Assembly (NCBI GenBank): GCA_950097015.1
Contig: CATNEN010000025.1
Coordinates: 9,641,800 to 9,705,799, forward strand
DNA length: 64,000 nucleotides
Direction: 5' to 3'
Origin: Macrostomum hystrix
Lineage: Eukaryota; Animalia; Platyhelminthes
The position numbers and the translations under genes are program-made. The notes below the pieces were generated by a model, which was given only the letters and a program-made list of their open reading frames with translations, was not told the origin of the DNA and searched no databases. Shown piece by piece: positions 451 to 40,708 of this stretch. The stretch's first letter is position 1, and every line of letters begins with the position of its first letter.

Positions 451-2898
451 ATGTATCGCGGCATCGAACTGAAGCGTGTTGTCAAAGCTACACTGCAAAC
501 TGGCTGTCGTGGGCGACCCAGAAAGATTAAGACAATCATTAGCGGCCGAAATCGAGGCTCAACATCTCGGCGTCCTGTGTCTGAAACTACTCCTGTTCCA
601 GTGGAAGCTAGCACCGAGAATGATGTCGGTATGCCTGAGTCTTTTGCTCCTACAGTAGAAGATGTTGAATGGGTAGATTTTGACAGCTTTGCTGAGAAAT
701 ACAGAGGTAGTTACGAGAAGCATTTTCTCTTAAATCTGTGTTCCTCTTGCTATGAGCACGAAGGTGTATATCGATGTGTTACTTGTCGACTTAGCTTATG
801 TGCCAGCTGTAAGAATGAGACGCATAAAAAGTTTTCAGCCCACAAGTTTCTCATATGGAATAAGGAGAGTCTAATGTTTCAGGAACTGGATGCTACTCAC
901 GATGCTTTTGAAATGTTTTGCTGCGCTTCTAGTAAATTGAATCTGAATGTCTGTGCGGCTACAAAAGTTGACCTTATAGATCTGGCTGGAAGCGTAAAGG
1001 TCATTTTTATTACCTGCGACTCCTGTGATCTTATTGGTGCACTCCTTTCTCAAGGGTTCTTCCCTTGTTGCGAAGGGTCAAAGCCTGATTCAGATGGGTA
1101 TGCATTCTTTTCTTTTACCTTTTTGTCCCTGCTAGACAGTTTGTGTATGACTGGGCAGTTGCCTGTTCACAGAGCGGTCAGTACACTGCTCATTGGGCCA
1201 ACTCTGGGACAAGGTACATATAATTTGGCTCTTGTAAAAAGCACTTATCAACGCATTCAACGACATGATGTTTTGCTGCGGTTTCGCCACCTGCAAATGG
1301 CCTCAGCAAAATGGCCAAATAATTGTCTTCTCTGTCCAGATAATCACGCTGTGCGCAAAACTGTTGTCTGTGCAGATGCTCTATTTGGTTGGCAGCGCTT
1401 TAAAGCCAGGGGGCGTACACAACTGGAAATACCATCAGATGGTCGTCCATTACCTACGCCGCTTGTCTATGTAGATATTAAAGCGGATGTGCCAAAAAAT
1501 CGAGCAGAGGAACAGAATTGTCCTAATTGGAAGGCCGGTGCTCATGAACCATTAAGCCGTGAGCAGAGACATGATGTCACGGGTTTCTTTGGATTATTCT
1601 GTCGTCACAATCGCCTTTTGTGTGGCTCAAATATCACAACTGGTGGAGAAAAGTTTTGCTACCTGGAACAGTGCCTTGAACACTTTCTGCGAAACGTCAA
1701 AGTGTCTAAGGAATTACTTGTCGTATATGACGTGGGTAAGTTTATTATTATTTTATAAAATGCATACAATCTATGAAATACTGTTGCTTGTGTACAGTTA
1801 TATGACAACATGACTTACTCTTTATCCCAATTCACAGGCTGTCGCGTATCCAGCCGGGTTAAATCCGCTATTGCGAAGTCTGGTGCCAACATTCAAGCGA
1901 GTAGCTGTGCAATAAACGCTTTTCATGCTCTTGGTCACCTGCCCAGTTGTCAAAAAAAGTTTTCTGTTCGCGTTACTCCAGGCGCAGGTCTATGCGATGG
2001 AGAGAATACTGAGCGAGCCTGGTCTCAACTCAGGCCGTTCGGTAAGTTTTTAAAGTACATGCGGAAAGACCGACGAGCACAATACATGGCGCATATTCTA
2101 TACTTCTTTAATGCACAACAGCTTCTTAGCGCTTCTGGGTGGTTTACACAACGTATTAAGCTTATGGTAGGTGCGGGAAAAAGCATTCTAAGTGAACTAA
2201 AAGAGCTACAAAGCCAGTCTGCGATTTTGCAGCACTCGGGGGTCCGAAATGACAGTCTGGTCATCTCTGAGGATGAAATTTTGGATTTAGGCTCCCAATG
2301 GTATGAAGATTCCCTCCGAGTAGCTGTACACAACTCGGAAGATGATATCCTATGTGAGCTACGCGCTCTTGCAGTGCACAGAGATCATTGGAGTAAACAG
2401 GTTGGTAAGTCAGTTGGCCAAAGTCAAACCAGAATGTGCTTGCGAAAGGTTAAAAGTTATGCATCCGACATGAAAAAACTCTACGCTCGTCTTCCAATTG
2501 AAGACAGAGCTTCTTTCGATGAATATAAAAAACCGCGTAGTGCGAAATATGAACATTTGTCTGGAACCGACCTTTCCATCCGATTTCGTCAGCGGGCTAT
2601 AGACGTCAGTAACAAATATAAACGCCTAAAAGAAGAAGCGCATATTATTTCAGATGAGTGGGTTGACCTTCAGGTTAATTTGCAGAGCCTCTGTGATGAC
2701 TTAGCGAATCAGCCGGGCTTAGCCGCTCAATTTCGGGAATTGTTTAGAAGACTGCTTGAAGATGTTGCAAGTAAAAGCGTGACTGATGCTGTAAAATATC
2801 TTCTTGCGAATAAATTCTCCCTCAGCACACTGAGTCAGAGCGCTAATGAAGCGGTTGCTTCAGAAGATTCGGAGTCTTCTGATAGCGACTCCGATTAA
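451..2898 (+). CDS. KDZ (Kyakuja-Dileera-Zisupton) family transposase with N-terminal CxC cysteine cluster; exons 451-1735 and 1838-2898, 781 aa if the ATG at 451 is the start
   Basis: Intron 1736-1837 (GTAAG...ttcacAG, phase 1) joins the two ORFs in frame, giving YDVG|CRV; 1285+1061=2346 nt. KDZ-like motifs: CADALFG, VTGFFGLFCRH, GEKFCY, YDVGC, FHALGHLPSCQ, GLCDGENTERAWS. N-terminal Cys/His cluster CSSC..YRCVTC..CASC..H..H..W and LLSQGFFP. An acceptor-like tttccAG at 446-447 suggests a further upstream exon or a spliced leader. Confidence 0.85.
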
Positions 2899-2970
2899 GT
2901 ATCCAACCAGTGTACTGATGATTCCACCGTTACTTGTGTTTTTAATTGAAGTCAAGCGCTGCCTTGTAAA

Positions 2971-3648
2971 GTCACTCTGCACCTACTTTTGTGTGGGTGC
3001 TGTGAAGCGTTAAGTTTAAGATCGCTAAAATTAATACCATTAAGCCCAAAATTTGGACACATTTCTTTCAACTAGCAAATTTTTTGCAGGTCACTTTGCA
3101 CATGCAATACAATGTGCTGTGAAGCGTTAAGTTTAAGAACGCTAAAATTAATACCAGTAAGCCCAAAGTTTGGACACATATTTCTTTCAACTAGCAAAAT
3201 ATTTACAGGTCACTTTGCACATGCAATTCAATGTGCTGTGAAGCGCTACATTTTAAAGCGCTATGAGCCCATGTGTCAGCCTTCTCGCGGCGGACTCGTT
3301 GAGCGCGAATAAAATCTGCTAATTACCGTGCGCTGCCAATCTTACCGTGCATGTTTGCACTATCCAGCGGACTGGCAGTGTACTTACGTTAGCTGTTTTT
3401 ATTCGTGGGACTAATGACACTATTAAATTCGTTCATTTATCAGCTTTTCCGTTCAATTCCGTTTTATTATTATTATATAGCTCACAGTTTCATTGTCTGT
3501 CAAATAAATGGAGGGGCTCCTAAACAGTGTTTCTCGTTCTTATTTTTTCATTGCTTGCCGTGCCTGATAAACATGTTTTCCTTTTTTAGCATTTACATAC
3601 TTGCGCCTATATACGTCACCGATTTCAGCGAAACGCAGGCAACTTAAA
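2971..3648 (+). repeat. Intergenic direct repeat copy A (~680 bp, with one extra ~117-bp subunit)
   Basis: Starts gtcactctgcacctac and ends gcaggcaacttaaa. Near-identical to 4815-5375 and to 6232-6675; the ORF track shows the same spurious peptides in each copy. Confidence 0.95.
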
Positions 3649-3696
3649 TAAACTCTTTAAAAAATCAAAATTCAGATTTCAAATTCAAAAGACAGC

Positions 3697-4709
3697 ATGC
3701 CCACTGATAAGCTCGATTGTCCGTTATGTCTTCCTGGTTTATCTGCCTATTCGGCCAGACCTGACAGGCTCGCTCTGCATATTGAAACGCATCATCCAAA
3801 CGCGAAAGGGAAGACGGAATGCATCATTCAATATCTACGTTGGTCGAAGAAGGCCGATGCAAAATTGTGCCAGCTATGCGATACATTCTATGTACATTTG
3901 CGGCAGCACTATAAGCTGATTCACACCATCGAATTCCGGCGACTTAACACTTTGCTGACAGGTCAACCAGCCATGCGACTCGCGCGAAAGCGTGGTGTTA
4001 AACGTTTTGGTGAAATATTCTGGTGGTTTACTTCCAATCAGCCGTTGCCAAACTATCCGTCCTCAGATGGCGACTGTGTTGGAAAGCTGGAAGAACAAAG
4101 GTAATTAATTTGTGAAGGGCATGTCACGATCTCATTTAAAGCTTAGTTACGTAAAATGCAAACTGCCTGTGCCATCTGTATTTTCTAAGTCTTGTCAACA
4201 CTTCCCACAGGCACTGCGAATCTTCTGCTGGCCAACGATCATGCATAGATGTCTACAGGAAAAGTTCAAATTTCGTCCCAGCCAAGGTTTTAGTGAAGCC
4301 TTCTGGTGAGAAGGGTCTCGGTATTTTTGCTGGTGAACTAATTAGAGCTGATTCATTCGTGTGCTTCTATGGTGGCACCGTAATATCTAGAAAACAAGGA
4401 CTCGCCAGAGAGCAGGAGAGGGCATCTAAAGGCGAGTCACCTTGTTTTGCGTTTTTCTTTTTTTATGGCTCCCAATCGCTTTGCGAAGATGCTACTGATA
4501 GTTTTTCCCTTGGTCGGTTTATTAATCACAGTCGGTTGACTCCAAATCTAATGCCAAGGGCGATACCACCATGTAAAGAAATCGGACGGAACGTCTGCAG
4601 GATCGCTTTTTTTGCTATTCGGGACATTCTAGAAGGGCAAGAATTGCTCTTCGATTATTCTGAAACTGACGAAGAGTGTCTAAAGAGGTTTCCCTGGCTG
4701 CAATCTTAA
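3697..4709 (+). CDS. Two C2H2-like zinc fingers plus SETD8/KMT5A (PR-Set7)-like SET lysine methyltransferase; exons 3697-4100 and 4211-4709, 300 aa
   Basis: Intron 4101-4210 (GTAATT...cccacAG, phase 2) fuses the ZnF ORF to the SET ORF with no stop; 404+499=903 nt. SET motifs: EKGLGIFA, FVCFYGG, LCEDAT, LGRFINHS, RDILEGQELLFDY, and C-terminal FPWL as in SETD8 (HPWL). Fingers: CPLC..HIETHH and CQLC..HYKLIH. Confidence 0.88.
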
Positions 4710-4814
4710 AAGTTCAAAAAATTGTACCAACTAGTCACTGCTAATCATTTTGAATTTGTTGCACATGCGTCAGACAAATTTCTTCAAAACTTGTCGCATA
4801 AAACATTACAGCAG

Positions 4815-5375
4815 GTCACTCTGCACCTACTTTTGTGTGGGTGCTGTGAAGCGTTAAGTTTAAGAACGCTAAAATTAATACCAGTAAGCCCAAAGTTTGG
4901 ACACATATTTCTTTCAACTAGCAAAATATTTACAGGTCACTTTGCACATGCAATTCAATGTGCTGTGAAGCGCTACATTTTAAAGCGCTATGAGCCCATG
5001 TGTCAGCCTTCTCGCGGCGGACTCGTTGAGCGCGAATAAAATCTGCTAATTACCGTGCTCTGCCAATCTTACCGTGCATGTTTGCACTATCCAGCGGACT
5101 GGCAGTGTACTTACGTTAGCTGTTTTTATTCGTGGGACTAATGACACTATTAAATTCGTTCATTTATCAGCTTTTCCGTTCAATTCCGTTTTATTATTAT
5201 TATATAGCTCACAGTTTCATTGTCTGTCAAATAAATGGAGGGGCTCCTAAACAGTGTTTCTCGTTCTTATTTTTTCATTGCTTGCCGTGCCTGATAAACA
5301 TGTTTTCCTTTTTTAGCATTTACATACTTGTGCCTATATACGTCACCGATTTCAGCGAAACGCAGGCAACTTAAA
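4815..5375 (+). repeat. Intergenic direct repeat copy B (561 bp)
   Basis: Same sequence as the shared part of copy A apart from a few substitutions (e.g. gtgctctg vs gtgcgctg, ttgtgcct vs ttgcgcct). Confidence 0.95.
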
Positions 5376-5416
5376 AAAAACTTTAAACTTCAAACTGTAA
5401 ACACACAAAACTCATC

Positions 5417-6151
5417 ATGCCCAACAAACACGCGAAAGTGTCCTGTCTTGTCTGTTCCAATTGGACTGGTAGATCCTACATGCTTTGGAGGCATTGCGAG
5501 AAAAGGCACCCCGCTCTGGAGGATGACAGGATTCAGGCGATGATTGACTTCGCGAAGGCGACTTCAAAAGCGAAGCCGGTGTGTCTCTGTCCGATATGCG
5601 GGGCTCTGATTTCTCACCAAAGAGCGCATTTTAAGAGATGCCACGTACCTGAATATGGCTCTACATACCGCCGCAAAGCCCTCTCGGGTCGTGCGGCTGT
5701 CCTGAAATTACGCGAATCAGGTTCGCGGCGTGTAGCAGAACTTCACAAACTTGCTACAGAAGAAAAGCATCCACTCCAATACATGGAACTTGAGTTCGCT
5801 GCTAGTCAGCTATCTATTCTGGTTGAGATGTACAAGGATATCGGCGAGGTACAAATTACATCAGCAACTAGCCAAGAGACGAGTGCGTCAACAAAACTTC
5901 CCGCAGAACAGCAGCAGCAGGAAGAGCGCTGCAACTCTTCTGAAGGTGCTCCTAAAAGTCCTAAACCTACGCCAGAAACTCATCGAGTTCCAGCTAAAAT
6001 CTGTCGAAACCCATTACCATTTGTGATTCCTCCAAGAGTCCCTTATTGCGTCAAACCCTTACCGCCTATTGTCTTGCGTAAATCTGCTACCAACTTGACC
6101 CGATATAACCCGAAAATTCCCACCTCGTCTCCCATAAAAATTGCTACCTGA
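5417..6151 (+). CDS. Two C2H2-like zinc fingers plus low-complexity S/P/K-rich tail, 244 aa; paralog of the ZnF-SET N-terminus
   Basis: Open ATG-to-stop ORF with CLVC-x12-H-x4-H and CPIC-x9-H-x4-H. It sits at the same position relative to the repeat as the ZnF-SET gene. An internal intron cannot be excluded. Confidence 0.7.
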   Translation: MPNKHAKVSCLVCSNWTGRSYMLWRHCEKRHPALEDDRIQAMIDFAKATSKAKPVCLCPICGALISHQRAHFKRCHVPEYGSTYRRKALSGRAAVLKLRESGSRRVAELHKLATEEKHPLQYMELEFAASQLSILVEMYKDIGEVQITSATSQETSASTKLPAEQQQQEERCNSSEGAPKSPKPTPETHRVPAKICRNPLPFVIPPRVPYCVKPLPPIVLRKSATNLTRYNPKIPTSSPIKIAT

Positions 6152-6231
6152 GGTCTTCCTGTTGGAACAAAATACCATACCACCCCTATCCCATGGAAAA
6201 ATTGGTATATCGACAGAGCCAATTACAGCAA

Positions 6232-6675
6232 GTCACTCTGCACCTACTTTTGTGTGGGTGCTGTGAAGCGTTAAGTTTAAGAGCGCTAAAATGAATACCA
6301 GTGAGGCCAAATTTTGGATACAATTCATTCAACTAGCAAAATATTTACAGGTCACTTTGCACATGCAATTCAATGTGCTGTGAAGCGCTACGTTTTAAAG
6401 CGCTATGAGCCCATGTGTCAGCCTTCTCGCGGCGGACTCGTTGAGCGCGAATAAAATCTGCTAATTACCGTGCGCTGCCAATCTTACCGTGCATGTTTGC
6501 ACTATCCAGCGGACTGGCAGTGTACTTACGTTAGCTGTTTTTATTCGTGGGACTAATGACACTATTAAATTCGTTCATTTATCAGCTTTTCCGTTCAATT
6601 CCGTTTTATTATTATTATATAGCTCACAGTTTCATTGTCTGTCAAATAAATGGAGGGGCTCCTAAACAGTGTTTC
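6232..6675 (+). repeat. Intergenic direct repeat copy C (3'-truncated or diverged)
   Basis: Matches copies A/B from gtcactctgcac to cctaaacagtgtttc, then diverges. Confidence 0.92.
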
Positions 6676-6944
6676 GCGTTTTCGTTTTTTAATTGCTTGT
6701 TTTTTAGATGCGCTTTCTTTCTGCTCATTAGTTGGCTGTGCAGGGAACAACTAGGACAAATGGAGATAGATGTGCATTTGAGAATAGACTGCCTGCTTTA
6801 TACAATTATATGCATGGCAGATCAATGTCCTTATTAGCGTTTATATATTAGCGTTCACGCCTTCATTTAGGGTCTAGCTTTAATTGTCAACGTTTCAAAC
6901 TTCAATCTCGAATAAATTTCAGGCCAGCATCACTTCCATTGAAA

Positions 6945-6989
6945 GTTGATGACACCTCCCAACATTGGGAGTTGGGAGGTGTCATCAAC
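6945..6989. other. Perfect 19-bp inverted repeat with 7-nt loop
   Basis: gttgatgacacctcccaac - attggga - gttgggaggtgtcatcaac. Confidence 0.95.
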
Positions 6990-7438
6990 ATTGGGATGAC
7001 GTGCGCGATGTCAACATGATGACGTGCGCGAGCATTCAACACAATGGAAATGACGATCCATACAATTTTTTAGGCGGTGTTTCTGGTCTTTCAACCGTTG
7101 TGACCAATATTTGAAGAAGCATCTTGCTAACGATATTTTAGCTTTTATAACTATTTGCACAATTAAAGGTACGTGGCTACGCACTTCTACGCCTTTAGCC
7201 TTGTCTAATGTCATTTTTCAATTCCCTCCAGTCGTCCAAGGCGTTTTGTTGTTATGCGAACTCGGCCAATCTGACTTCATAATTGCTTCATATGCGTTCA
7301 TATGCATACAAGTGTGAATGCTCATATGCGTGTGTACACCTTTCGTGTCTGCTTGCCTGCAATCCTACTTGTGCATGTATTTGACTTACCTATAGTCATT
7401 ACACTTAGCTAGAGTAATTTAGCCCAGGTGTGGCAACA

Positions 7439-8080
7439 ATGGTCAGAGGAGAGCTAGAGTCAAACTGTTCAGAATATGTTCCGATGACTAAATTATTCAG
7501 TTTTCCCTGGTAGTCATGCAATTTCTTGGATGGTCAGAGGAGAGCTAGAGTCAAACTGTTCAGAATATGTTCCGATGACTAAATTATTCAGTTTTCCCTG
7601 GTAGTCATGCAATTTCTTCAATGGTCAGAGGAGAGCTAGAGTCAAACTGTTCAGAATATGTTCCGATGACTAAATTATTCAGTTTTCCCTGGTAGTCATG
7701 CAATTTCTTGGATGGTCAGAGGAGAGCTAGAGTCAAACTGTTCAGAATATGTTCCGATGACTAAATTATTCAGTTTTCCCTGGTAGTCATGCAATTTCTT
7801 CAATGGTCAGAGGAGGGCTAGAGTCAAACTGTTCAGAATATGTTCCGATGACTAAATTATTCAGTTTTCCCTGGTAGTCATGCAATTTCTTGGATGGTCA
7901 GAGGAGAGCTAGAGTCAAACTGTTCAGAATATGTTCCGATGACTAAATTATTCAGTTTTCCCTGGTAGTCATGCAATTTCTTGGATGGTCAGAGGAGAGC
8001 TAGAGTCAAACTGTTCAGAATATGTTCCGATGACTAAATTATTCAGTTTTCCCTGGTAGTCATGCAATTTCTTCAATGGT
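7439..8080. repeat. Tandem repeat, 91-bp unit, 7 copies
   Basis: ggtcagagga... recurs at 7441, 7532, 7623, 7714, 7805, 7896 and 7987; a partial copy starts at 8078. Confidence 0.97.
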
Positions 8081-8447
8081 CGTGCTCCCTTGCAAACGAG
8101 CAGCGGAGTGAGAGGAGAGAGTTCTGAAGTTCTGAACGCGTTTGACAATGATAAAATATCAAACTCTAATACCTGCTTTCTTTATGCTCACTGTGCATGC
8201 ACTGTATGTGTTTTTACGTGAGGGTCTGTACTTTGTTCAATTAATGTTTCTGTCTAACTAGGACTTTTCACCAATTCTTTTCCGTGTCAATCTTCAGGGA
8301 AAATACATAAGCTAATTTATCAAAACATATCAGCGCATCTCATTGGCAAAAATTGTGCCGCACAGGCACGGCATAGGTGACCTGCTGCAAGGTATACTGA
8401 CTAAAATTATTATTATGTTATTATTATTACTTCTTTCTTGGAATCAC

Positions 8448-8720
8448 AGGGTGAGGTGACAGAGAAGAGGGTGAGGTGACAGAGGAGAGAGTGGGGTGAC
8501 AGAGAGGAGAGAGTGAGGGCACAGAGGAGAAAGTGAGGGCACAGAGGAGAAAGTGAGGGCACAGAGGAGAAAGTGAGGGCACAGAGGAGAAAGTGAGGGC
8601 ACAGAGGAGAAAGTGAGGGCACAGAGGAGAAAGTGAGGGCACAGAGTGGAGAAAGTGAGGGCACAAAGGAGAAAGTGAGGGCACAGAGTGGAGAAAGTGA
8701 GGGCACAGAGAGGAGAAAGT
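8448..8720. repeat. Purine-rich minisatellite, ~20-bp unit (gaggagaaagtgagggcaca)
   Basis: Direct reading of about 13 units. Confidence 0.95.
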
Positions 8721-8831
8721 TAACTTTGATGAATTTCGATGGGATTTGATTCCCCGTATTCTGGGATAGACGTAGAAGCGATCCCTGTCGAAATCCGGGG
8801 TCAATAAGTAAGCCTGCGGCGTCGCATCACA

Positions 8832-11800
8832 CAGACTATACTTAATTATTACTATTGTAGCCAGATTTATAAACTTGAACTGGAGCTTGTGGGCACCTAT
8901 TGCCGTTTAGGAAAATTCAAGAAACCAACAATTGCAGTGCCACGCTTGGCCTCAACTACATGATTTTCGCACTACAAAGACTATACTTAATTACTATTGT
9001 AGCCCGATTTATAAACTTGAACTGGAGCTTGTGGGCACCTATTGCCGTTTAGGAAAATTCAAGAAACCAACAATTGCAGTGCCACGCTTGGCCTCAACTA
9101 CATGATTTTCGCACTACAAAGACTATACTTAATTACTATTGTAGCCAGATTTATAAACTTGAACTGGAGCTTGTGGGCACCTATTGCCGTTTAGGAAAAT
9201 TCAAGAAACCAACAATTGCAGTGCCACGCTTGGCCTCAACTACATGATTTTCGCACTACAAAGACTATACTTAATTACTATTGTAGCCAGATTTATAAAC
9301 TTGAACTGGAGCTTGTGGGCACCTATTGCCGTTTAGGAAAATTCAAGAAACCAACAATTGCAGTGCCACGCTTGGCCTCAACTACATGATTTTCGCACTA
9401 CAAAGACTATACTTAATTACTATTGTAGCCAGATTTATAAACTTGAACTGGAGCTTGTGGGCACCTATTGCCGTTTAGGAAAATTCAAGAAACCAACAAT
9501 TGCAGTGCCACGCTTGGCCTCAACTACATGATTTTCGCACTACAAAGACTATACTTAATTACTATTGTAGCCAGATTTATAAACTTGAACTGGAGCTTGT
9601 GGGCACCTATTGCCGTTTAGGAAAATTCAAGAAACCAACAATTGCAGTGCCACGCTTGGCCTCAACTACATGATTTTCGCACTACAAAGACTATACTTAA
9701 TTACTATTGTAGCCAGATTTATAAACTTGAACTGGAGCTTGTGGGCACCTATTGCCGTTTAGGAAAATTCAAGAAACCAACAATTGCAGTGCCACGCTTG
9801 GCCTCAACTACATGATTTTCGCACTACAAAGACTATACTTAATTACTATTGTAGCCAGATTTATAAACTTGAACTGGAGCTTGTGGGCACCTATTGCCGT
9901 TTAGGAAAATTCAAGAAACCAACAATTGCAGTGCCACGCTTGGCCTCAACTACATGATTTTCGCACTACAAAGACTATACTTAATTACTATTGTAGCCAG
10001 ATTTATAAACTTGAACTGGAGCTTGTGGGCACCTATTGCCGTTTAGGAAAATTCAAGAAACCAACAATTGCAGTGCCACGCTTGGCCTCAACTACATGAT
10101 TTTCGCACTACAAAGACTATACTTAATTACTATTGTAGCCAGATTTATAAACTTGAACTGGAGCTTGTGGGCACCTATTGCCGTTTAGGAAAATTCAAGA
10201 AACCAACAATTGGTGCCACGCTTGACCTCAACTACATGATTTTCGCACTTCAAAGACTATACTTAATTACTATTGTAGCCAGATTTATAAACTTGAACTG
10301 GAGCTTGTGGGCACCTATTGCCGTTTAGGAAAATTCAAGAAACCAACAATTGCAGTGCCACGCTTGGCCTCAACTACATGATTTTCGCACTACAAAGACT
10401 ATACTTAATTACTATTGTAGCCAGGTTTATAAACTTGAACTGGAGCTTGTGGGCACCTATTGCTGTTTAGGAAAATGCAAGAAACCAACAATTGGTGCCA
10501 CGCTTGACCTCAACTACATGATTTTCGCACTTCAAAGACTATACTTAATTACTATTGTAGCCAGATTTATAAACTTGAACTGGAGCTTGTGGGCACCTAT
10601 TGCTGTTTAGGAAAATGCAAGAAACCAACAATTGGTGCCACGCTTGGCCTCAACTACATGATTTTCGCACTTCAAAGACTATACTTAATTACTATTGTAG
10701 CCAGATTTATAAACTTGAACTGGAGCTTGTGGGCACCTATTGCTGTTTAGGAAAATGCAAGAAACCAACAATTGGTGCCACGCTTGACCTCAACTACATG
10801 ATTTTCGCACTTCAAAGACTATACTTAATTACTATTGTAGCCAGATTTATAAACTTGAACTGGAGCTTGTGGGCACCTATTGCCGTTTAGGAAAATTCAA
10901 GAAACCAACAATTGCAGTGCCACGCTTGGCCTCAACTACATGATTTTCGCACTACAAAGACTATACTTAATTACTATTGTAGCCAGGTTTATAAACTTGA
11001 ACTGGAGCTTGTGGGCACCTATTGCTGTTTAGGAAAATGCAAGAAACCAACAATTGGTGCCACGCTTGACCTCAACTACATGATTTTCGCACTTCAAAGA
11101 CTATACTTAATTACTATTGTAGCCAGATTTATAAACTTGAACTGGAGCTTGTGGGCACCTATTGCCGTTTAGGAAAATTCAAGAAACCAACAATTGCAGT
11201 GCCACGCTTGGCCTCAACTACATGATTTTCGCACTTCAAAGACTATACTGAATTACTATTGTAGCCAGATTTATAAACTTGAACTGGAGCTTGTGGGCAC
11301 CTATTGCTGTTTAGGAAAATGCAAGAAACCAACAATTGGTGCCACGCTTGACCTCAACTACATGATTTTCGCACTTCAAAGACTATACTTAATTACTATT
11401 GTAGCCAGATTTATAAACTTGAACTGGAGCTTGTGGGCACCTATTGCCGTTTAGGAAAATTCAAGAAACCAACAATTGCAGTGCCACGCTTGGCCTCAAC
11501 TACATGATTTTCGCACTACAAAGACTATACTTAATTACTATTGTAGCCAGGTTTATAAACTTGAACTGGAGCTTGTGGGCACCTATTGCTGTTTAGGAAA
11601 ATGCAAGAAACCAACAATTGGTGCCACGCTTGACCTCAACTACATGATTTTCGCACTTCAAAGACTATACTTAATTACTATTGTAGCCAGATTTATAAAC
11701 TTGAACTGGAGCTTGTGGGCACCTATTGCTGTTTAGGAAAATGCAAGAAACCAACAATTGGTGCCACGCTTGGCCTCAACTACATGATTTTCGCACTTCA

Positions 11801-12918
11801 AAGACTATACTTAATTACTATTGTAGCCAGATTTATAAACTTGAACTGGAGCTTGTGGGCACCTATTGCTGTTTAGGAAAATGCAAGAAACCAACAATTG
11901 GTGCCACGCTTGACCTCAACTACATGATTTTCGCACTTCAAAGACTATACTTAATTACTATTGTAGCCAGATTTATAAACTTGAACTGGAGCTTGTGGGC
12001 ACCTATTGCCGTTTAGGAAAATTCAAGAAACCAACAATTGCAGTGCCACGCTTGGCCTCAACTACATGATTTTCGCACTACAAAGACTATACTTAATTAC
12101 TATTGTAGCCAGGTTTATAAACTTGAACTGGAGCTTGTGGGCACCTATTGCTGTTTAGGAAAATGCAAGAAACCAACAATTGGTGCCACGCTTGACCTCA
12201 ACTACATGATTTTCGCACTTCAAAGACTATACTTAATTACTATTGTAGCCAGATTTATAAACTTGAACTGGAGCTTGTGGGCACCTATTGCCGTTTAGGA
12301 AAATTCAAGAAACCAACAATTGCAGTGCCACGCTTGGCCTCAACTACATGATTTTCGCACTTCAAAGACTATACTGAATTACTATTGTAGCCAGATTTAT
12401 AAACTTGAACTGGAGCTTGTGGGCACCTATTGCTGTTTAGGAAAATGCAAGAAACCAACAATTGGTGCCACGCTTGACCTCAACTACATGATTTTCGCAC
12501 TTCAAAGACTATACTTAATTACTATTGTAGCCAGATTTATAAACTTGAACTGGAGCTTGTGGGCACCTATTGCTGTTTAGGAAAATGCAAGAAACCAACA
12601 ATTGGTGCCACGCTTGACCTCAACTACATGATTTTCGCACTTCAAAGACTATACTTAATTACTATTGTAGCCAGATTTATAAACTTGAACTGGAGCTTGT
12701 GGGCACCTATTGCTGTTTAGGAAAATGCAAGAAACCAACAATTGGTGCCACGCTTGACCTCAACTACATGATTTTCGCACTTCAAAGACTATACTTAATT
12801 ACTATTGTAGCCAGATTTATAAACTTGAACTGGAGCTTGTGGGCACCTATTGCTGTTTAGGAAAATGCAAGAAACCAACAATTGGTGCCACGCTTGACCT
12901 CAACTACATGATTTTCGC
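8832..12918. repeat. Satellite array, 142/140-bp monomers (~29 copies), with 1126-bp higher-order repeat
   Basis: Period 142 (cacgcttgg at 8941, 9083, 9225). The 140-bp variant reads ttggtgcc instead of ttgcagtgcc. A diagnostic atactgaatt variant occurs at 11250 and 12376 (1126 apart). A diverged monomer lies at ~13003-13090. Confidence 0.97.
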
Positions 12919-13779
12919 AGCCAGTTTCCCAGTTTCCCCAGTTTCTCCAGTTTCCATGGAGAGACCTGGCGTATATTGTTGTTGTTGTTGTTGTTGTTTC
13001 GCAGCACACAGACTACTTAATTATTACTATTGTAGCCAGAGTTATAAACTTTAACTGGGGCTCGAGCTTGTGGGCACCTATTGCCGTTTGCATGCACTTG
13101 TCACCACTGTCTGCTGTTGTTTGTGTCTCATGCTTGGTTTGCGTGCGACTGGGTTGGGCCGTCTGTCTGGGATCCCCCAAATCCCCAGCCCTGCAGGGTC
13201 TGGAAATTAGACTGCATGAACGCATATATAAGGAGCCGCGATATCAGACTGGTTCTTTACTGTGTGTTTCAATTCTGGCCTTACTTCTGCCTTTGAGTTA
13301 TTACAACTTACTCAAGAAGCCGTTTACAAATTATCAGTAAGATATATACATGTAGCTTGTGGATGCACAGCACGATTTTGTGAATGTCACACGATATGAC
13401 ATCCCTCAGAGAAACGGAAATTAAAGGGAAGCATTCTTCATGAACTTATACTCATCTATGAGCAAAATGAGGTGTGCAACGAAGCCAATAATGAGGTAAG
13501 TCAGAGTTTAACAAACACTAGCCCATATCAAAATAATAAATATATATGTGTGTGTATCTGGCTTAACCTAAAGTCAGTACAACTACTGTACCGTACTTTA
13601 TGTTTGTCAGTAGATGAATCGGAGATAATCCGAGAATCCATCAATAAATTATTTTTATGAGGCCTATAAACCAATATCAAGAGCAATGTTTCAAAATACG
13701 GATATATGACTTAGTATTTATTTTTTAAGTTAGTAATCAGCACCAACAGCTTGGAACTTGAAAGTTCATTCAGTCCATT

Positions 13780-33120: not shown

Positions 33121-33257
33121 GAAAATGTCTAGTCGCTCTAGTAGATTAAAAATTCATTCGCTTATCCACTCTCTTATCCGAGTTCAACTGGTATTCGTAT
33201 TAATTCATTTCGCCTTTGGTGTTGGTATATTTTTCACATAATCTCCATTACTACAAG

Positions 33258-36200
33258 TAATCTCTGCATTAATTGCATTCTCTGCATTGATCTCTGCATT
33301 AATTGCATTCTCTGCATTAATCTCTGCATTAATTGCATTCTCTGCATTCATCTCTGCATTAATATCTGCATTAATTGCATTCTTTGCATTAATCTCTGCA
33401 TTAATCTCTGCATTAATCTCTGCATTAATCTCTGCATTAATCTCTGCATTAATCTCTGCATTAATCTCTGCATTAATCTCTTCATTAATTGCATTCTTTG
33501 CATTAATCTCTGCATTAATTGCATTCTTTGCATTAATCTCTGCATTGATTGCATTCTTTGCATTAATCTCTGCATTAATTGCATTCTTTGCATTAATCTC
33601 TGCATTAATCTCTTCATTAATTGCATTCTTTGCATTAATCTCTGCATTAATCTCTGCATTAATTGCATTCTTTGCATTAATCTCTGCACTAATTGCATTC
33701 TTTGCATTAATCTCTGCACTAATTGCATTCTTTGCATTAATCTCTGCATTAATCTCTTCATTAATTGCATTCTTTGCATTAATCTCTGCATTAATCTTTT
33801 CATTAATTGCATTCTTTGCATTAATCTCTGCATTAATTGCATTCTTTGCATTAATCTCTGCATTAATCTCTTCATTAATTGCATTCTTTGCATTAATCTC
33901 TGCATTAATCTCTTCATTAATTGCATTCTTTGCATTAATCTCTGCATTAATCTTTTCATTAATTGCATTCTTTGCATTAATCTCTGCATTAATTGCATTC
34001 TTTGCATTAATCTCTGCATTAATCTCTGCATTAATTGCATTCTCTGCATTAATCTCTTCATTAATTGCATTCTCTGCATTAATCTCTGCATTAATTGCAT
34101 TCTCTGCATTAATCTCTGCATTAATCTCTGCATTAATTGCATTCTCTGCATTAATCTCTGCATTAATCTCTGCATTAATTGCATTCTCTGCATTAATCTC
34201 TGCATTAATCTCTGCATTAATTGCATTCTTTGCATTAATCTCTGCATTAATTGCATTCTTTGCATTAATCTCTGCATTAATTGCATTCTTTGCATTAATC
34301 TCTGCATTAATCTCTGCATTAATTGCATTCTTTGCATTAATCTCTGCATTAATTGCATTCTTTGCATTAATCTCTGCATTAATTGCATTCTTTGCATTAA
34401 TCTCTGCATTAATCTCTTCATTAATTGCATTCTTTGCATTAATCTCTGCATTAATCTCTGCATTAATCTCTGCATTAATCTCTGCATTAATCTCTGCATT
34501 AATCTCTGCATTAATCTCTGCATTAATCTCTGCATTAATTGCATTCTCTGCATTAATCTCTGCATTAATCTCTTCATTAATTGCATTCTCTGCATTAATC
34601 TCTGCATTAATCTCTGCATTAGTTGCATTCTCTGCATTAATCTCTGCATTAATCTCTTCATTAATTGCATTCTCTGCATTAATCTCTGCATTAATCTCTG
34701 CATTAATTGCATTCTTTGCATTAATCTCTGCATTAATTGCATTCTTTGCATTAATCTCTGCATTAATCTCTGCATTAATTGCATTCTTTGCATTAATCTC
34801 TGCATTAATTGCATTCTTTGCATTAATCTCTGCATTAATTGCATTCTTTGCATTAATCTCTGCATTAATCTCTTCATTAATTGCATTCTTTGCATTAATC
34901 TCTGCATTAATCTCTGCATTAATCTCTGCATTAATCTCTGCATTAATCTCTGCATTAATCTCTGCATTAATCTCTTCATTAATTGCATTCTTTGCATTAA
35001 TCTCTGCATTAATTGCATTCTTTGCATTAATCTCTGCATTGATTGCATTCTTTGCATTAATCTCTGCATTAATTGCATTCTTTGCATTAATCTCTGCATT
35101 AATCTCTTCATTAATTGCATTCTTTGCATTAATCTCTGCATTAATCTCTTCATTAATTGCATTCTTTGCATTAATCTCTGCACTAATTGCATTCTTTGCA
35201 TTAATCTCTGCACTAATTGCATTCTTTGCATTAATCTCTGCATTAATCTTTTCATTAATTGCATTCTTTGCATTAATCTCTGCATTAATTGCATTCTTTG
35301 CATTAATCTCTGCATTAATCTCTTCATTAATTGCATTCTTTGCATTAATCTCTGCATTAATTGCATTCTTTGCATTAATCTCTGCATTGATTGCATTCTT
35401 TGCATTAATCTCTGCATTAATTGCATTCTTTGCATTAATCTCTGCATTAATCTCTTCATTAATTGCATTCTTTGCATTAATCTCTGCATTAATCTCTGCA
35501 TTAATTGCATTCTTTGCATTAATCTCTGCATTAATTGCATTCTTTGCATTAATCTCTGCATTAATTGCATTCTTTGCATTAATCTCTGCATTAATCTCTT
35601 CATTAATTGCATTCTTTGCATTAATCTCTGCATTAATTGCATTCTTTGCATTAATCTCTGCATTAATCTCTTCATTAATTGCATTCTTTGCATTAATCTC
35701 TGCATTAATCTCTGCATTAATTGCATTCTTTGCATTAATCTCTGCATTAATCTCTGCATTAATTGCATTCTCTGCATTAATCTCTGCATTAATCTCTGCA
35801 TTAATCTCTTCATTAATTGCATTCTTTGCATTAATCTCTGCATTAATCTCTGCATTAATTGCATTCTCTGCATTAATCTCTGCATTAATCTCTGCATTAA
35901 TTGCATTCTTTGCATTAATCTCTGCATTAAACTCTTCATTAATTGCATTCTCTGCATTAATCTCTGCATTAATTGCATTCTTTGCATTAATCTCTGCATT
36001 AATCTCTTCATTAATTGCATTCTTTGCATTAATCTCTGCATTAATCTCTGCATTAATTGCATTCTCTGCATTAATCTCTGCATTAATCTCTGCATTAATT
36101 GCATTCTTTGCATTAATCTCTGCATTAAACTCTTCATTAATTGCATTCTCTGCATTAATCTCTGCATTAATCTCTGCATTAATTGCATTCTTTGCATTAA

Positions 36201-38583
36201 TCTCTGCGTTAATTGCATTCTTTGCATTAATCTCTGCATTAATCTCTGCATTAATCTCTGAATTGATTGCATTCTCTGCATTAATCTCTGCATTAATCTC
36301 TGCATTAATTGCATTCTTTGCATTAATCTCTGCATTAATTGCATTCTTTGCATTAATCTCTGCATTAATTGCATTCTTTGCATTAATCTCTGCATTAATT
36401 GCATTCTTTGCATTAATCTCTGCATTAATCTCTGCATTAATTGCATTCTTTGCATTAATCTCTGCATTAATCTCTGCATTAATTGCATTCTTTCCATTAA
36501 TCTCTGCATTAATTGCATTCTTTGCATTAATCTCTGCATTAATTGCATTCTTTGCATTAATCTCTGCATTAATCTCTGCATTAATCTCTGCATTAATTGC
36601 ATTCTTTGCATTAATCTCTGCATTAATCTCTTCATTAATCTCTGCATTAATGTCTGCATTAATCTCTGCATTAATCTCTGCATTAATCTCTGCATTAATC
36701 TCGGCATTAATCTCTGCATTAATCTCTGCATTAATTGCATTAATATCTGCATTAATCTCTTCATTAATTGCATTCTCTGCATTAATCTCTGCGTTAATTG
36801 CATTCTTTGCATTAATCTCTGCGTTAATCTCTGCATTAATCTCTGCATTAATTGCATTCTCTGCATTAATCTCTGCATAAATCTCTGCATTAATCTCTGC
36901 ATTAATCTCTGCATTAATCTCTGCATTAATTGCATTCTCTGCATTAATCTCTGCATTAATCTCTGCAGAGATCTCTGCATTCTCTGCATCTCTGCATCTC
37001 TGCAGATCTCTGCATCTCTGCATTAATCTCTGCATTAATCTCTGCATTAATTGCATTCTCTGCATTAATCTCTGCATTCATCTCTGCATTAATTGCATTC
37101 TCTGCATTAATCTCTGCATTAATCTCTGCATTAATCTCTGCATTAATCTCTGCATTAATCTCTGCATTAATCTCTGCATTAATTGCATTCTCTGCATTAA
37201 TCTCTGCATTAATCTCTGCATTAATCTCTGCATTAATATCTGCATTAATCTCTGCATTAATTGCATTCTCTGCATTAATCTCTGCATTAATCTCTGCATT
37301 AATCTCTGCATTAATCTCTGCATTAATCTCTGCATTAATCTCTGCATTAATTGCATTCTCTGCATTAATCTCTGCATTAATCTCTGCATTAATCTCTGCA
37401 TTAATCTCTGCATTAATCTCTGCATTAATCTCTGCATTAATCTCTGCATTAATCTCTGCATTAATTGCATTAATCTCTGCATTAATCTCTTCATTAATTG
37501 CATTCTCTGCATTAATCTCTGCCTTAATCTCTTCATTAATTGCATTCTCTGCATTAATCTCTGCATTAATCTCTGCATTAATCTCTGTATTAATTTCTGC
37601 ATTAATCTCTGCATTAATCTCTGCATTAATCTCTGCATTAATCTCTGCATTAATTGCATTCTCTGCATTAATCTCTGCATTAATCTCTGCATTAATCTCT
37701 TCATTAATTGCATTCTCGGCATTAATCTCTGCATTAATCTCTGCATTAATCTCTGCATTAATCTCTGCATTAATCTCTGCATTAATCTCTGCATTAATTG
37801 CATTCTCTGCATTAATCTCTGCATTAATCTCTGCATTAATCTCTGCATTAATCTCTGCATTAATCTCTGCATTAATCTCTGCATTAATCTCTGCATTAAT
37901 CTCTGCATTAATCTCTGCATTAATCTCTGCATTAATCTCTGCATTAATCTCTGCATTAATTGCATTCTCTGCATTAATCTCTGCATTAATCTCTGCATTA
38001 ATCTCTGCATTAATCTCTGCATTAATCTCTGCATTAATCTCTGCATTAATCTCTGCATTAATCTCTGCATTAATTGCATTCTCTGCATTAATCTCTGCAT
38101 TAATCTCTGCATTAATCTCTGCATTAATTGCATTCTCTGCATTAATCTCTGCATTAATCTCTGCATTAATCTCTGCATTAATCTCTGCATTAATCTCTGC
38201 ATTAATCTCTGCATTAATTGCATTCTCTGCATTAATCTCTGCATTAATCTCTGCATTAATCTCTGCATTAATCTCTGCATTAATCTCTGCATTAATTGCA
38301 TTCTCTGCATTAATCTCTGCATTAATCTCTGCATTAATCTCTGCATTAATCTCTACATTAATTGCATTCTCTGCATTAATCTCTGCATTAATCTCTGCAT
38401 TAATCTCTGCATTAATCTCTGCATTAATCTCTGCATTAATCTCTGCATTAATCTCTGCATTAATCTCTGCATTAATCTCTGCATTAATCTCTGCATTAAT
38501 CTCTGCATTAATCTCTGCATTAATCTCTGCATTAATCTCTGCATTAATCTCTGCATTAATCTCTGCATTAATCTCTGCATTAA
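33258..38583. repeat. 5.3-kb satellite of 12-bp units (atctctgcatta) mixed with 18-bp variants (attgcattct[ct]tgcatta)
   Basis: Direct reading; the long ORFs on both strands arise from stop-free repeat frames. Confidence 0.98.
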
Positions 38584-39658: not shown

Positions 39659-40708
39659 TCACCTCAAGGCCTGGGGATACACCACATTCATCGTTATTCC
39701 CCTTGGTGCGAAAATGAATAGGCCAGCTGGAGTTCCAACACGGCAGCAGGCGACATAAAGCTGCCCATGCGAGAAGCAAGGAGTCTCCAGGTTGATGCCA
39801 GCCACCTTCAGCGACTGTCCCTGAGCCTTGTTAATAGTCATCGCAAAGCACACTCTCACAGGGAACTGCAGTCGCTTGAACTGAAATGGCAGGTCCGTGG
39901 GGATAATTGGAATCCGGGGAACGAACACAGACTCTCCTCTGCCAGATCCAGTCATTATCGTGGCCTCAATCACGTGTGGGAAGAGCCGCCTGACTATCAG
40001 TCTGGTGCCGTTACACAGCCTTGGCGCATTCAGGTTGCGGAGGAGCATAATTGGTGCCCCAACTTTCAGCTGCAAGTTGTGCGATGGAGTTCCAGGAGGA
40101 TCTAGAGAGTTCAGAAACTCAACAGGATACTCCACAGCGGTGTCATCAGTCAACGTTGTATCAATTGACTTGTAGGTGAAAACTGCACCTGGCAACTCCT
40201 GAAGCAGTTGGTAGTTAATTTCGTTGGCGGCATCATTTCTAGGACACAGAATTGCCCTCTCTGACAGCCAGTCAACGTCAGCATATCGAACCATCAGGTT
40301 CGGGTAAACTTTTGCCTTGAGCTCCTGCACTGACTGCACAATGGTTCCGATTGTAGCGATCGATGACTGCCCATCCTCGGTGCTAATCTCCAGCAGACCA
40401 TTGCCGATTCGCAATAGATTGGCAGAGAACTCATGAGCTGTTTCGTCTCCTTGAATTGTAGCTCTCATGTTTGTTCGTAGGTGCAACTTCACAACCGATG
40501 GCCACAGGTGAGATGATTTTAGGCAAGCATTAATCTCATCAGCAGGAGTGCCACGCGGAATCACAGGCAGCGTCTGTCTAAAGTCTCCAGACAGCAGCAG
40601 AGTGACACCACCCATCAGTTGATCGCCAGCCTCTCTCTTTCTTCTATCCCAGGCTGGCTGGAGAGAAATATAGACCGGAGAGCCCTGCGCACTGGGACGC
40701 CACCGCAC
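39659..40708 (-). pseudogene. Helitron PIF1-like helicase, C-terminal part only
   Basis: GGVTLLLSGDFRQTLPV, LKVGAPIMLLRNL..LCNGTRL, RLQFPVRVCFAMTINKAQGQSL, FSHGQLYVA. The Rep domain and motif I are absent. Confidence 0.93.

What the first reader, a model, noticed from the sequence alone, without database searches (positions are those of the whole stretch)
451..6990. KDZ transposase linked to a zinc-finger/SETD8-like histone methyltransferase: candidate transposon carrying its own chromatin writer
Seen: an apparently intact spliced KDZ transposase (candidate catalytic D, D and E in CADAL, YDVG and GENTER) is followed, co-oriented and within 1 kb, by an intact spliced ZnF-SET gene and a ZnF paralog, tied together by shared spacers. 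All three frames are open in a window where nearly every other element is decayed. Established: KDZ elements carry chromatin-related cargo (TET/JBP linkage in basidiomycetes, SWIM/SAP in fish Zisupton), and SETD8 methylates H4K20. Inference: this is one mobile unit whose ZnF-targeted methyltransferase marks its own or host chromatin (anti-silencing, self-regulation or target-site priming). I do not know of this combination being described, but I could not search.
Basis: partly seen in the sequence, partly recalled or inferred. Interest (0 to 1): 0.88.

Follow-up and report, generated by a model that had tools for sequence, protein, structure and literature searches.

The report
KDZ transposase with SET-enzyme gene module
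In Macrostomum flatworms a KDZ "cut-and-paste" transposase gene has stayed joined, over a very long time, to a gene for a zinc-finger histone-methyltransferase-like enzyme and a zinc-finger-only partner, which looks like a jumping gene carrying its own chromatin enzyme, although its ends and its mobility are not yet shown.

Summary
Window 451-6151 carries three intact, co-oriented genes:
- a two-exon KDZ transposase of 781 aa;
- a two-exon gene of 300 aa, with two C2H2-type zinc fingers and a SETD8/PR-Set7-like SET domain;
- a 244-aa paralog with the zinc fingers only.

About 580-bp direct repeats, 96-97% identical, separate them.

The same three genes also sit together at two deeply diverged loci of Macrostomum lignano. 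One has the same gene order and the other has the two accessory genes swapped. A fourth lineage occurs in another sequencing sample. All genes are open although silent sites are saturated, and all three give the same relative distances between lineages. In M. lignano the transposase and the ZnF-SET gene share one transcriptional-unit name. So "one unit" is well supported.

Mobility is not shown. I found no terminal repeats, no target-site duplications and no multi-copy spread, and a domesticated host locus remains a real rival. The chromatin-marking role is inference.

SET cargo is already known in Harbinger, MuDR, Helitron and Plavaka elements of oomycetes and a red alga. I found no paper on KDZ plus SET or in animals.

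This scan had already met the combination on other DNA of this genome (s1-253522).

Verdict: new variant of a known kind, moderately interesting.

The parts
451..1735 (+). KDZ transposase exon 1. It holds an RGRPRK AT-hook-like motif, a B-box-like Cys cluster, a weak CxC1-like cluster, and the first half of the KDZ domain with the CADAL motif.
   Evidence: Pfam KDZ 38.6 bits, profile positions 3-125; B-box and CxC1 matches are below their cut-offs. Motifs located.
1736..1837 (+). KDZ intron of 102 nt, GT..AG, phase 1.
   Evidence: The YDVG|C junction is the same in M. lignano P0160. An intron sits at the same place in L006.
1838..2898 (+). KDZ transposase exon 2. It holds the second half of the KDZ domain, the DGENTER motif and an acidic Ser/Asp tail, and ends with the stop codon.
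   Evidence: Pfam KDZ 59.9 bits, profile positions 125-214. It is 54% identical to lineage A.
2969..3144 (+). Partial duplicate of the first ~176 bp of spacer repeat R. It overlaps R copy 1, whose first part holds an array of ~119-bp units at 2997-3245.
3086..3661 (+). Spacer repeat R, copy 1. It ends 36 nt before the ZnF-SET ATG.
   Evidence: 97.2% identical to copy 2 over 578 columns.
3697..4100 (+). ZnF-SET exon 1, with two C2H2-type zinc fingers (C8, C11, H28, H33 and C58, C61, H71, H76).
   Evidence: These Cys/His positions are invariant in 7 family sequences. It is 62% identical to lineage A.
4101..4210 (+). ZnF-SET intron of 110 nt, GT..AG.
   Evidence: The spliced product aligns to P0002 without gaps.
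4211..4709 (+). ZnF-SET exon 2, a SETD8/PR-Set7-like SET domain that runs to the C-terminal FPWLQS and the stop codon.
   Evidence: Pfam SET 6.6e-16. PDB sequence hits to SETD8 at about 1e-14. The model has pLDDT 85, and its top 15 fold matches are all human SET8, with TM-scores 0.73-0.85.
4811..5387 (+). Spacer repeat R, copy 2. It starts about 100 nt after the ZnF-SET stop and ends 30 nt before the ZnF-only ATG.
5417..6151 (+). ZnF-only gene of 244 aa. It has the same two-finger module, then a low-complexity tail.
   Evidence: 27% identical to ZnF exon 1, E 5e-9. Counterparts lie in M. lignano locus A (45% identity) and locus B (33%).
6222..6699 (+). Spacer repeat R, copy 3. Its 3' side is truncated and no gene follows it.
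   Evidence: About 96% identical to copies 1 and 2.

Best explanation
This is one copy of an old, low-copy, three-gene KDZ-class DNA element of Macrostomum flatworms.

Its genes are:
- a KDZ transposase;
- an accessory gene that joins two C2H2-type zinc fingers to a SETD8/PR-Set7-like lysine methyltransferase domain;
- a paralogous accessory protein with the zinc fingers only.

Shown:
- All three genes are intact and spliced.
- The trio is kept together in at least three deeply diverged lineages.
- All three genes have stayed open although silent sites are saturated.
- The SET domain has the SET8 fold and keeps the residues that are invariant in the family alignment.

Inferred from the M. lignano annotation's naming rule: the transposase and the ZnF-SET gene are read from one transcriptional unit, which is then cut into separate mRNAs.

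Inferred without a test:
- The unit moves, or moved, by its own transposase.
- The zinc fingers bring the methyltransferase to particular DNA, either the element itself or its satellite-rich surroundings. There it would lay down an H4K20-type methyl mark that serves the element, for example by self-regulation, by shielding from or hiding in heterochromatin, or by helping break repair at excision or insertion.
- The finger-only paralog acts as partner or competitor at the same sites.
- The near-identical spacers are kept alike by gene conversion or recombination within the unit.
For: Anatomy and domains.

SET classification: sequence hits to SETD8. The model's top 15 fold hits are all human SET8, with TM-scores 0.73-0.85. 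G35, Y53, G55, C91, D93, H106, N112, E144 and Y149 are invariant in a 26-sequence family alignment.

Linkage:
- An exhaustive search of 1.84 billion representatives gave the closest relatives P0002 (61%) and P0006 (41%), both from M. lignano.
- Both carry the same zinc fingers.
- Both lie just downstream of a co-oriented KDZ gene.
- A ZnF-only gene sits beside each.
- The window is colinear with locus A in coding parts only.

Co-divergence:
- Window-to-A identity is 0.55, 0.54, 0.62, 0.61 and 0.45 for the five gene segments, always higher than window-to-B or A-to-B.
- dS is saturated and dN is 0.27-0.70.

Fourth lineage: KDZ and ZnF-SET also occur in sample SRR19430222.

The CADAL, YD[VI]G and DGExTER motifs are kept in all four lineages.

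Co-transcription:
- The KDZ gene is BOX15_Mlig001681g7 and the ZnF-SET gene is BOX15_Mlig001681g4.
- By the annotation's rule a shared prefix means one cluster of transcriptional units, and such units often hold several trans-spliced genes (PMC5730564).

The lack of TIRs is not disqualifying. Kyakuja-type KDZ elements have 7-bp TSDs and no TIRs (PMC12730594).
Against: - No TIR, TSD or shared terminus was found in the window or in about 20 kb around either M. lignano locus.
- Copy number looks low. The four lineage-A contigs are 98.5-99.8% identical including their flanks, so they are one locus in a redundant assembly (PMC5730564). Lineage B was seen on one contig.
- The genes survived a GenBank filter that removed transcripts overlapping annotated repeats.
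- Long persistence of intact genes at low copy number also fits a host-kept locus.
- The window holds only 450 bp upstream of the transposase, so a left end could not be looked for.
- The SET tree does not resolve whether the four ZnF-SET proteins form one clade, and I did not identify the host's own SETD8 ortholog.
- Substrate, target and biological role are untested.
Confidence: 0.58

Rival explanations
1. Domesticated locus. A KDZ-derived gene, the ZnF-SET gene and the ZnF-only gene form a fixed, co-transcribed host gene cluster that no longer transposes. The host keeps it for some chromatin or genome-maintenance job in satellite-rich regions. The two M. lignano loci and the window would then be old segmental paralogs or orthologs.
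For: - All three genes are intact after saturating silent divergence.
- Copy number is low, and each lineage sits at one locus.
- No TIRs or TSDs were found.
- The genes are annotated as ordinary genes that do not overlap called repeats.
- The window and locus A have the same gene order.
Against: - The candidate catalytic motifs of the transposase are fully kept in four lineages. A host could also use them, but this is what an active element needs.
- The loci lie among satellites and decayed mobile elements, not among host genes.
- No flanking similarity was seen between the window and locus A.
- Gene order differs in locus B.
- Earlier notes of this scan report further copies in this genome, in other settings. 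I did not check them.
Confidence: 0.3
2. Cassette array. The near-identical spacers are recombination sites at which accessory genes are gained, lost or reshuffled behind the transposase. The unit would then be a modular array rather than a fixed three-gene element. This can hold together with either reading above.
For: - In every lineage the DNA after the KDZ gene recurs after the accessory gene or genes: 96-97% identity in the window, 97% in locus A and 99.7% in locus B.
- The spacer sequences are unrelated between lineages.
- The two kinds of accessory gene (ZnF-SET and ZnF-only) that the spacers separate share only 27% protein identity in their finger modules.
- The accessory genes are in swapped order in locus B.
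Against: - Only the same two accessory genes are ever seen.
- There is no evidence of any site-specific recombinase step.
- Gene conversion among repeated regulatory or processing regions of one transcriptional unit would give the same picture.
- No copies of R were found elsewhere in the window or the fetched loci.
Confidence: 0.1
3. Chance neighbours. An ordinary host ZnF-SET gene family happens to lie next to an unrelated KDZ transposon in this window.
For: The region is rich in mobile elements, so chance adjacency is possible at a single locus.
Against: - The same adjacency, the same orientation and the same third gene recur at two diverged M. lignano loci.
- Divergence is congruent for all three genes.
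- The KDZ and ZnF-SET genes share one transcriptional-unit name.
Confidence: 0.02

Closest known systems
KDZ (Kyakuja-Dileera-Zisupton) DNA transposons carrying TET/JBP dioxygenase genes in fungi (Iyer et al. 2014 as cited in PMC12730594; Kojima 2025, PMC12730594)
   Same: - The same transposase superfamily (Pfam KDZ, with a weak CxC1 match).
- A transposase gene closely linked to a gene for an enzyme that writes or edits an epigenetic mark.
- The linkage is the main argument for co-mobilisation.
- Kyakuja-type members lack TIRs.
   Different: - The cargo here is a histone-type lysine methyltransferase (SET), not a DNA-base dioxygenase.
- The host is an animal.
- There is a second, zinc-finger-only accessory gene.
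- Ends and TSDs are defined for the fungal elements but not here.
DNA transposons with SET-domain accessory genes: HarbingerS and MuDR of Phytophthora, Helitrons, and Plavaka PAG2 of the red alga Bostrychia (PMC12730594 introduction; bioRxiv 10.1101/2025.02.11.637652)
   Same: A cut-and-paste or rolling-circle element that carries a SET-domain gene next to its transposase. In Bostrychia there are several accessory genes and tandem repeat arrays next to them.
   Different: - They belong to other transposase superfamilies. Plavaka belongs with EnSpm-like elements, not KDZ.
- Their hosts are oomycetes and algae.
- PAG2 joins SET to a DNA methylase domain. Here SET is joined to C2H2 fingers and is specifically SETD8-like.
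SETD8 / PR-Set7 / KMT5A, the H4K20 monomethyltransferase
   Same: - It is the best sequence and fold match over the whole catalytic domain, including the N-flanking helix and the C-terminal ..PWL.. end.
- The NHS motif and the ELL(F/Y)DY motif are present.
   Different: - The protein is short (300 aa).
- Its N-terminus is a two-finger C2H2 module, where the solved human SETD8 chains show no matching segment.
- Several Tyr of the lysine channel are Phe in the window copy.
- The gene is always next to a KDZ transposase gene.
- The substrate is untested.
SETMAR (Metnase), the primate SET-mariner fusion
   Same: A SET methyltransferase and a DNA transposase are functionally tied together.
   Different: - SETMAR is one fused host protein, made from a host SET gene and a captured mariner transposase.
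- Here there are separate genes, a different transposase class and a different SET subfamily. SETMAR is only a weak PDB hit at 3.4e-7.
VANDAL (MuDR) elements of Arabidopsis with the VANC anti-silencing protein (cited in PMC12730594 and in the Bostrychia preprint)
   Same: An accessory protein encoded by the element acts on the element's own chromatin in a sequence-specific way. This is the functional model proposed here.
   Different: VANC is not an enzyme of the SET class. The action of the flatworm proteins is only inferred.

Membership tests
KDZ transposase superfamily | Match to the KDZ transposase domain (Pfam PF18758) above the curated cut-off | tested here: met
   The two exons score 38.6 and 59.9 bits against a cut-off of 26.6. 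Together they cover profile positions 3-214 of 217.
KDZ transposase superfamily | Associated CxC cysteine cluster upstream of the catalytic domain | tested here: inconclusive
   CxC1 scores 14.7 bits, below its cut-off of 26.9. A B-box-like cluster scores 21.4 bits, below its cut-off of 27.
KDZ transposase superfamily | Conserved acidic catalytic candidates | tested here: met
CADAL, YD[VI]G and DGExTER are kept in the window, in M. lignano loci A and B, and in the SRR19430222 copy.
KDZ DNA transposon (a mobile element, not just the gene) | Defined termini (TIRs, or CA..TG ends) and 7-8-bp target-site duplications | tested here: inconclusive
   No inverted repeats flank the unit in the window or in the M. 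lignano loci. Only 450 bp lie upstream of the gene in the window. Kyakuja-type elements have no TIRs.
KDZ DNA transposon (a mobile element, not just the gene) | Several non-allelic copies with shared ends and different flanks | tested here: inconclusive
   Three to four diverged lineages exist at different loci. Within a lineage, however, I saw only one locus. Whole genomes could not be searched.
Transposon with a captured accessory gene | The accessory gene co-occurs with the transposase in independent copies | tested here: met
   KDZ, ZnF-SET and ZnF-only lie together in the window and in loci A and B. Divergence of the three genes is congruent.
SET-domain lysine methyltransferases | SET domain match and conserved cofactor and catalytic motifs | tested here: met
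   Pfam SET 59.1 bits against a cut-off of 22.4. The NHS and ELLFDY motifs are aligned to SETD8. The family-invariant residues are present.
SETD8/PR-Set7 subfamily | Closest by sequence and by fold to SETD8 over the whole catalytic domain, with no pre-SET or post-SET Cys clusters | tested here: met
   The best named PDB sequence hits are SET8/SETD8. The top 15 fold hits are human SET8, with TM-scores 0.73-0.85. The protein ends at ..FPWLQS, as SETD8 ends at ..PWLKH in the alignment.
SETD8/PR-Set7 subfamily | Being the host's orthologous SETD8 gene | tested here: inconclusive
   The added zinc fingers, the several diverged paralogs and the KDZ linkage argue that it is an extra copy. The domain tree is unresolved, and the host ortholog was not identified.
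SETD8/PR-Set7 subfamily | Monomethylation of histone H4 Lys20 | not testable with these tools
   This needs an enzyme assay.
C2H2 zinc fingers | Cys-x2-Cys ... His-x3-5-His spacing and a match to C2H2 profiles | tested here: inconclusive
   Two C-x2-C...H-x4-H units are invariant in 7 sequences. In P0006 the Pfam zf-C2H2 and zf-H2C2_5 matches are below their cut-offs. The model is of middling confidence and has no fold match.

The most novel reading that the evidence does not exclude
A family of animal KDZ transposons encodes its own zinc-finger-guided H4K20-type methyltransferase and a finger-only partner. It expresses them with the transposase from one precursor transcript, and it uses them to write chromatin at its own DNA or at its satellite targets. 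The spacers between the genes are kept identical by recombination, which also reshuffles the cassettes.
Probability: 0.3. Interest if true: 0.8.

Novelty: new variant of a known kind. Interest (0 to 1): 0.6.

Why it matters
- Mobile elements that bring their own epigenetic enzymes are rare. So far they are described mainly in fungi, oomycetes, plants and algae.
- If this is such an element, it would be an animal example with a histone-type writer. It would allow a direct test of whether a transposon can set its own chromatin state or choose heterochromatic targets.
- It sits in Macrostomum lignano's genus. For that species, transgenesis and a transcript-based genome annotation are reported (PMC5730564), so the proposed expression and localisation experiments look feasible there.
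- If it turns out to be a domesticated locus, it would be a case of a transposase kept together with a chromatin enzyme for a host function, which is also of interest.

Tried and rejected
- **Word-indexed protein search with the 165-aa SET piece:** nothing found. Full-length relatives are 300 aa or more, outside the length filter. The exhaustive search solved this.
- **Exact look-ups of the window's ORFs:** not in the collection.
- **TIR searches:** nothing found in any of these.
  - Long inverted repeats in 10 kb and in the whole window.
  - Exact inverted words of 11-14 nt between 1-450 and 2899-12000.
  - Inverted matches around loci A and B.
- **Rfam on the whole window:** no RNA family, so the spacer is not a known RNA gene.
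- **Zinc-finger region:** no PDB sequence match. The model has pLDDT 67 and no fold match.
- **SET-domain tree of 156 sequences:** only the pair window + P0002 is supported (99). Monophyly of the ZnF-SET proteins is neither shown nor excluded.
- **dN/dS:** silent sites are saturated, so most ratios could not be computed. Only dN and protein identity are given.
- **Long multi-domain SET hits from other animals:** scanned for KDZ domains, none found.
- **Literature:** no paper names Mlig001681, Mlig022522 or SRR19430222. None joins KDZ with Macrostomum.
- **20-bp satellite shared by loci A and B:** absent from the window.


Full report
**What is in the window**

Positions 451-6151 hold three co-oriented, intact genes on the + strand.

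- **Gene 1, the KDZ transposase.**
  - Its two ORFs match the two halves of Pfam KDZ, both above the curated cut-off.
  - A 102-nt GT..AG intron (1736-1837) joins them into a 781-aa protein.
  - It starts with an RGRPRK motif and a B-box-like Cys cluster.
  - It keeps the motifs CADAL, YDVG and DGENTER.
- **Gene 2, the ZnF-SET gene.**
  - Exon 1 is 3697-4100 and exon 2 is 4211-4709, with a 110-nt GT..AG intron.
  - The product is 300 aa: two C2H2-type fingers followed by a SET domain.
- **Gene 3, the ZnF-only gene** (5417-6151, 244 aa).
  - It has the same two fingers, with 27% identity to exon 1 (E 5e-9) and eight invariant Cys/His positions.
  - A low-complexity tail follows the fingers.
- **Spacer repeat R.**
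  - A repeat of about 580 bp follows each gene: 3086-3661, 4811-5387 and a truncated 6222-6699.
  - The copies are 96-97% identical.
  - The first two copies run to within 30-36 nt of the next ATG.
  - R occurs nowhere else in the 64 kb and matches no Rfam family.

**What the SET domain is**

- By sequence, the best solved relatives are Cryptosporidium SET8 (2.8e-19) and human SETD8 (about 1e-14). Other SET classes are far behind.
- A model of the exon-2 product has pLDDT 85. Its 15 best fold matches are all human SET8, with TM-scores of 0.73-0.85. The match covers the N-flanking helix and the C-terminal end.
- The residues invariant in a 26-sequence family alignment are all present.
- The Phe at the Phe/Tyr switch (ELLFDY) is found in the window copy and in one other lineage. 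Both M. lignano copies have Tyr there.
- The zinc-finger part gave no sequence or fold match to a solved structure.

**Does the SET gene travel with the transposase?**

An exhaustive HMMER search of 1.84 billion representative proteins used the SET piece as query.

- The two closest relatives are M. lignano proteins. P0002 is 300 aa and 61% identical. P0006 is 409 aa and 41% identical.
- P0009, from sequencing run SRR19430222, also ranks near the top.
- Only these three, plus the fragment P0151 that overlaps P0002, carry the same zinc fingers.

**Locus A (P0002).**
- P0002 lies on four contigs of the M. lignano assembly. In the two loci that extend far enough upstream (L001, L002), a co-oriented KDZ gene of 808-809 aa sits about 720 bp upstream.
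- The three loci fetched from these contigs are 98.5-99.8% identical over up to 18 kb, flanks included. They are therefore one locus in an assembly known to be redundant (PMC5730564).
- A ZnF-only gene that starts MPNKHAK, like the window's, follows at L002 12005-12823.
- The window is colinear with this locus in all three coding regions, at about 67% nucleotide identity. Nothing else aligns.

**Locus B (P0006).**
- P0006 lies on another contig, with a KDZ gene of 830 aa upstream.
- Here the ZnF-only gene sits between the transposase and the ZnF-SET gene, so the two accessory genes are in swapped order.

**Further lineage.** Run SRR19430222 also holds a KDZ contig with an intron at the same YD(V/I)G position.

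**Divergence and splicing.**
- Protein identity between the window and A is 0.45-0.62 across the five segments. It is always higher than window-to-B or A-to-B (0.33-0.52).
- Silent sites are saturated.
- All three genes have therefore stayed open, and diverged in step, for a long time.
- The spliced window proteins align with the M. lignano gene models across both splice junctions. The ZnF-SET alignment has no gaps at all.

**Expression as one unit**

- The lineage-A transposase is named BOX15_Mlig001681g7. The ZnF-SET gene is BOX15_Mlig001681g4.
- In that annotation, the prefix is given to clusters of "transcriptional units".
- These units were often precursor RNAs holding several genes. They were cut into genes at trans-splice and poly(A) sites (PMC5730564).
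- The shared prefix thus points to one transcriptional unit for both genes. This is an inference from the naming rule, not something I saw in reads.
So these genes were not recognised as a repeat family, which fits a low copy number.

**Is it mobile?**

- I found no terminal inverted repeats and no target-site duplications, in the window or around the M. lignano loci.
- The window gives only 450 bp upstream of the transposase gene.
- The lack of TIRs is not decisive. Kyakuja-type KDZ elements have 7-bp duplications and CA..TG ends without TIRs (PMC12730594).
- All loci lie among satellites and decayed mobile elements.
- The whole trio exists at two or more unrelated positions. This means it was copied as a unit, by transposition or by segmental duplication.
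- I rate "old, low-copy KDZ element with two accessory genes" at about 0.58 and "domesticated, immobile host locus" at about 0.3.
- Chance adjacency is excluded for practical purposes.

**Two unexplained features**

*The spacers.*
- In each lineage, the DNA behind the transposase gene recurs almost unchanged behind the accessory gene or genes.
- In locus A the copies are at L002 9232-9808, 11065-11655 and 12966-13211, 97% identical. In locus B they are at L004 8092-8386 and 12070-12364, 99.7% identical.
- Yet the spacers of different lineages are unrelated.
- The two kinds of accessory gene (ZnF-SET and ZnF-only) that the spacers separate share only 27% protein identity in their finger modules.
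- This needs continuing gene conversion or recombination confined to the spacers.
- Together with the swapped order in B, it leaves room for a "cassette" reading.

*The upstream block and satellite.*
- Loci A and B share a block of about 290 bp, 92% identical. It lies 2.7-2.8 kb upstream of the transposase ATG, in the same orientation in both.
- The block runs into a satellite of 20-bp units, about 79% identical between the loci.
- This is far more alike than the genes are.
- Either it is an arm of the element that is kept alike, or it is a separate repeat next to which both units sit.
- It is absent from the window, but its expected place lies outside the window.

**Comparison with what is known**

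- KDZ elements linked to TET/JBP dioxygenase genes are known in fungi (PMC12730594).
- SET-domain accessory genes are reported in several other elements:
  - HarbingerS and MuDR of Phytophthora;
  - Helitrons;
  - Plavaka elements of the red alga Bostrychia, where the SET domain is joined to a DNA methylase.
- Plavaka is not a KDZ relative.
- I found no paper that joins KDZ with a SET gene, and none on KDZ in Macrostomum.
- This is therefore a new variant of a known kind:
  - an animal host and a KDZ transposase;
  - a SETD8-like writer with its own zinc fingers;
  - a finger-only partner.

**Earlier notes of this scan**

- The same combination was already noted on other DNA of this genome (s1-253522, s1-253534, s1-410596, s1-332685).
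- One follow-up (s1-253522) says that two elements in a related species carry it too.
- I reached the two M. lignano loci independently. I could not inspect the other copies in this genome.

**Verdict**

- Interest is 0.6.

Noticed in passing
L007:517-7319 and L004:319-2314 (M. lignano): A block of about 290 bp (92% identical) followed by a satellite of 20-bp units (GGCGCCAATTTGAGCTTTCC; 6.4 kb and about 1.7 kb long). It lies 2.7-2.8 kb upstream of the KDZ start in both diverged loci, in the same orientation. It is far better conserved than the genes.
   Followed up: partly
window 8833-12919: A 4-kb array of a 142-bp satellite. Sixteen of its roughly 29 units carry a heat-shock-element-like motif (GAAAATTCAAGAA). 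Sixteen of the window's 19 matches to this pattern lie in this array, where about 1 match is expected by chance for the whole window.
   Followed up: no
window 7439-8081 and 8451-8720: A 91-bp satellite (7 copies, 97% matches) and a 20-bp repeat lie directly after the third spacer copy. The three-gene unit is bordered by tandem repeats here, as it is in M. lignano.
   Followed up: no
window 39659-41242 (-) and 54086-58010 (+): Fragments of a Helitron-type PIF1 helicase, and an LTR-retroelement pol (RT, RNase H, integrase zinc domain). Both are split over several ORFs, so they are probably decayed.
   Followed up: partly
window 33205-37077 and 49839-51916: Stretches with extreme strand skew (GC skew down to -0.43, AT skew up to +0.58) and long ORFs open in several frames. 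These are low-complexity repeats, not genes.
   Followed up: no
L005 and L006 (Logan assembly of SRR19430222): Short genomic contigs from an unnamed sample encode a fourth lineage of the ZnF-SET protein (P0009, 349 aa) and of the KDZ transposase (P0161). The transposase has its intron at the same YD(V/I)G position. The organism could not be identified.
   Followed up: partly
P0001 (Holothuria leucospilota) and P0003 (Phyllopteryx taeniolatus): Annotated proteins with 8 and 5 tandem SETD8-like SET segments rank among the best hits. This suggests that SETD8-like domains are amplified as repeats in other animals too. No KDZ domain was found in P0003; P0001 was not scanned.
   Followed up: partly
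window 2997-3245: Spacer R begins with about 2 tandem copies of a 119-bp unit. Copy 1 of R carries one extra unit compared with copies 2 and 3.
   Followed up: partly
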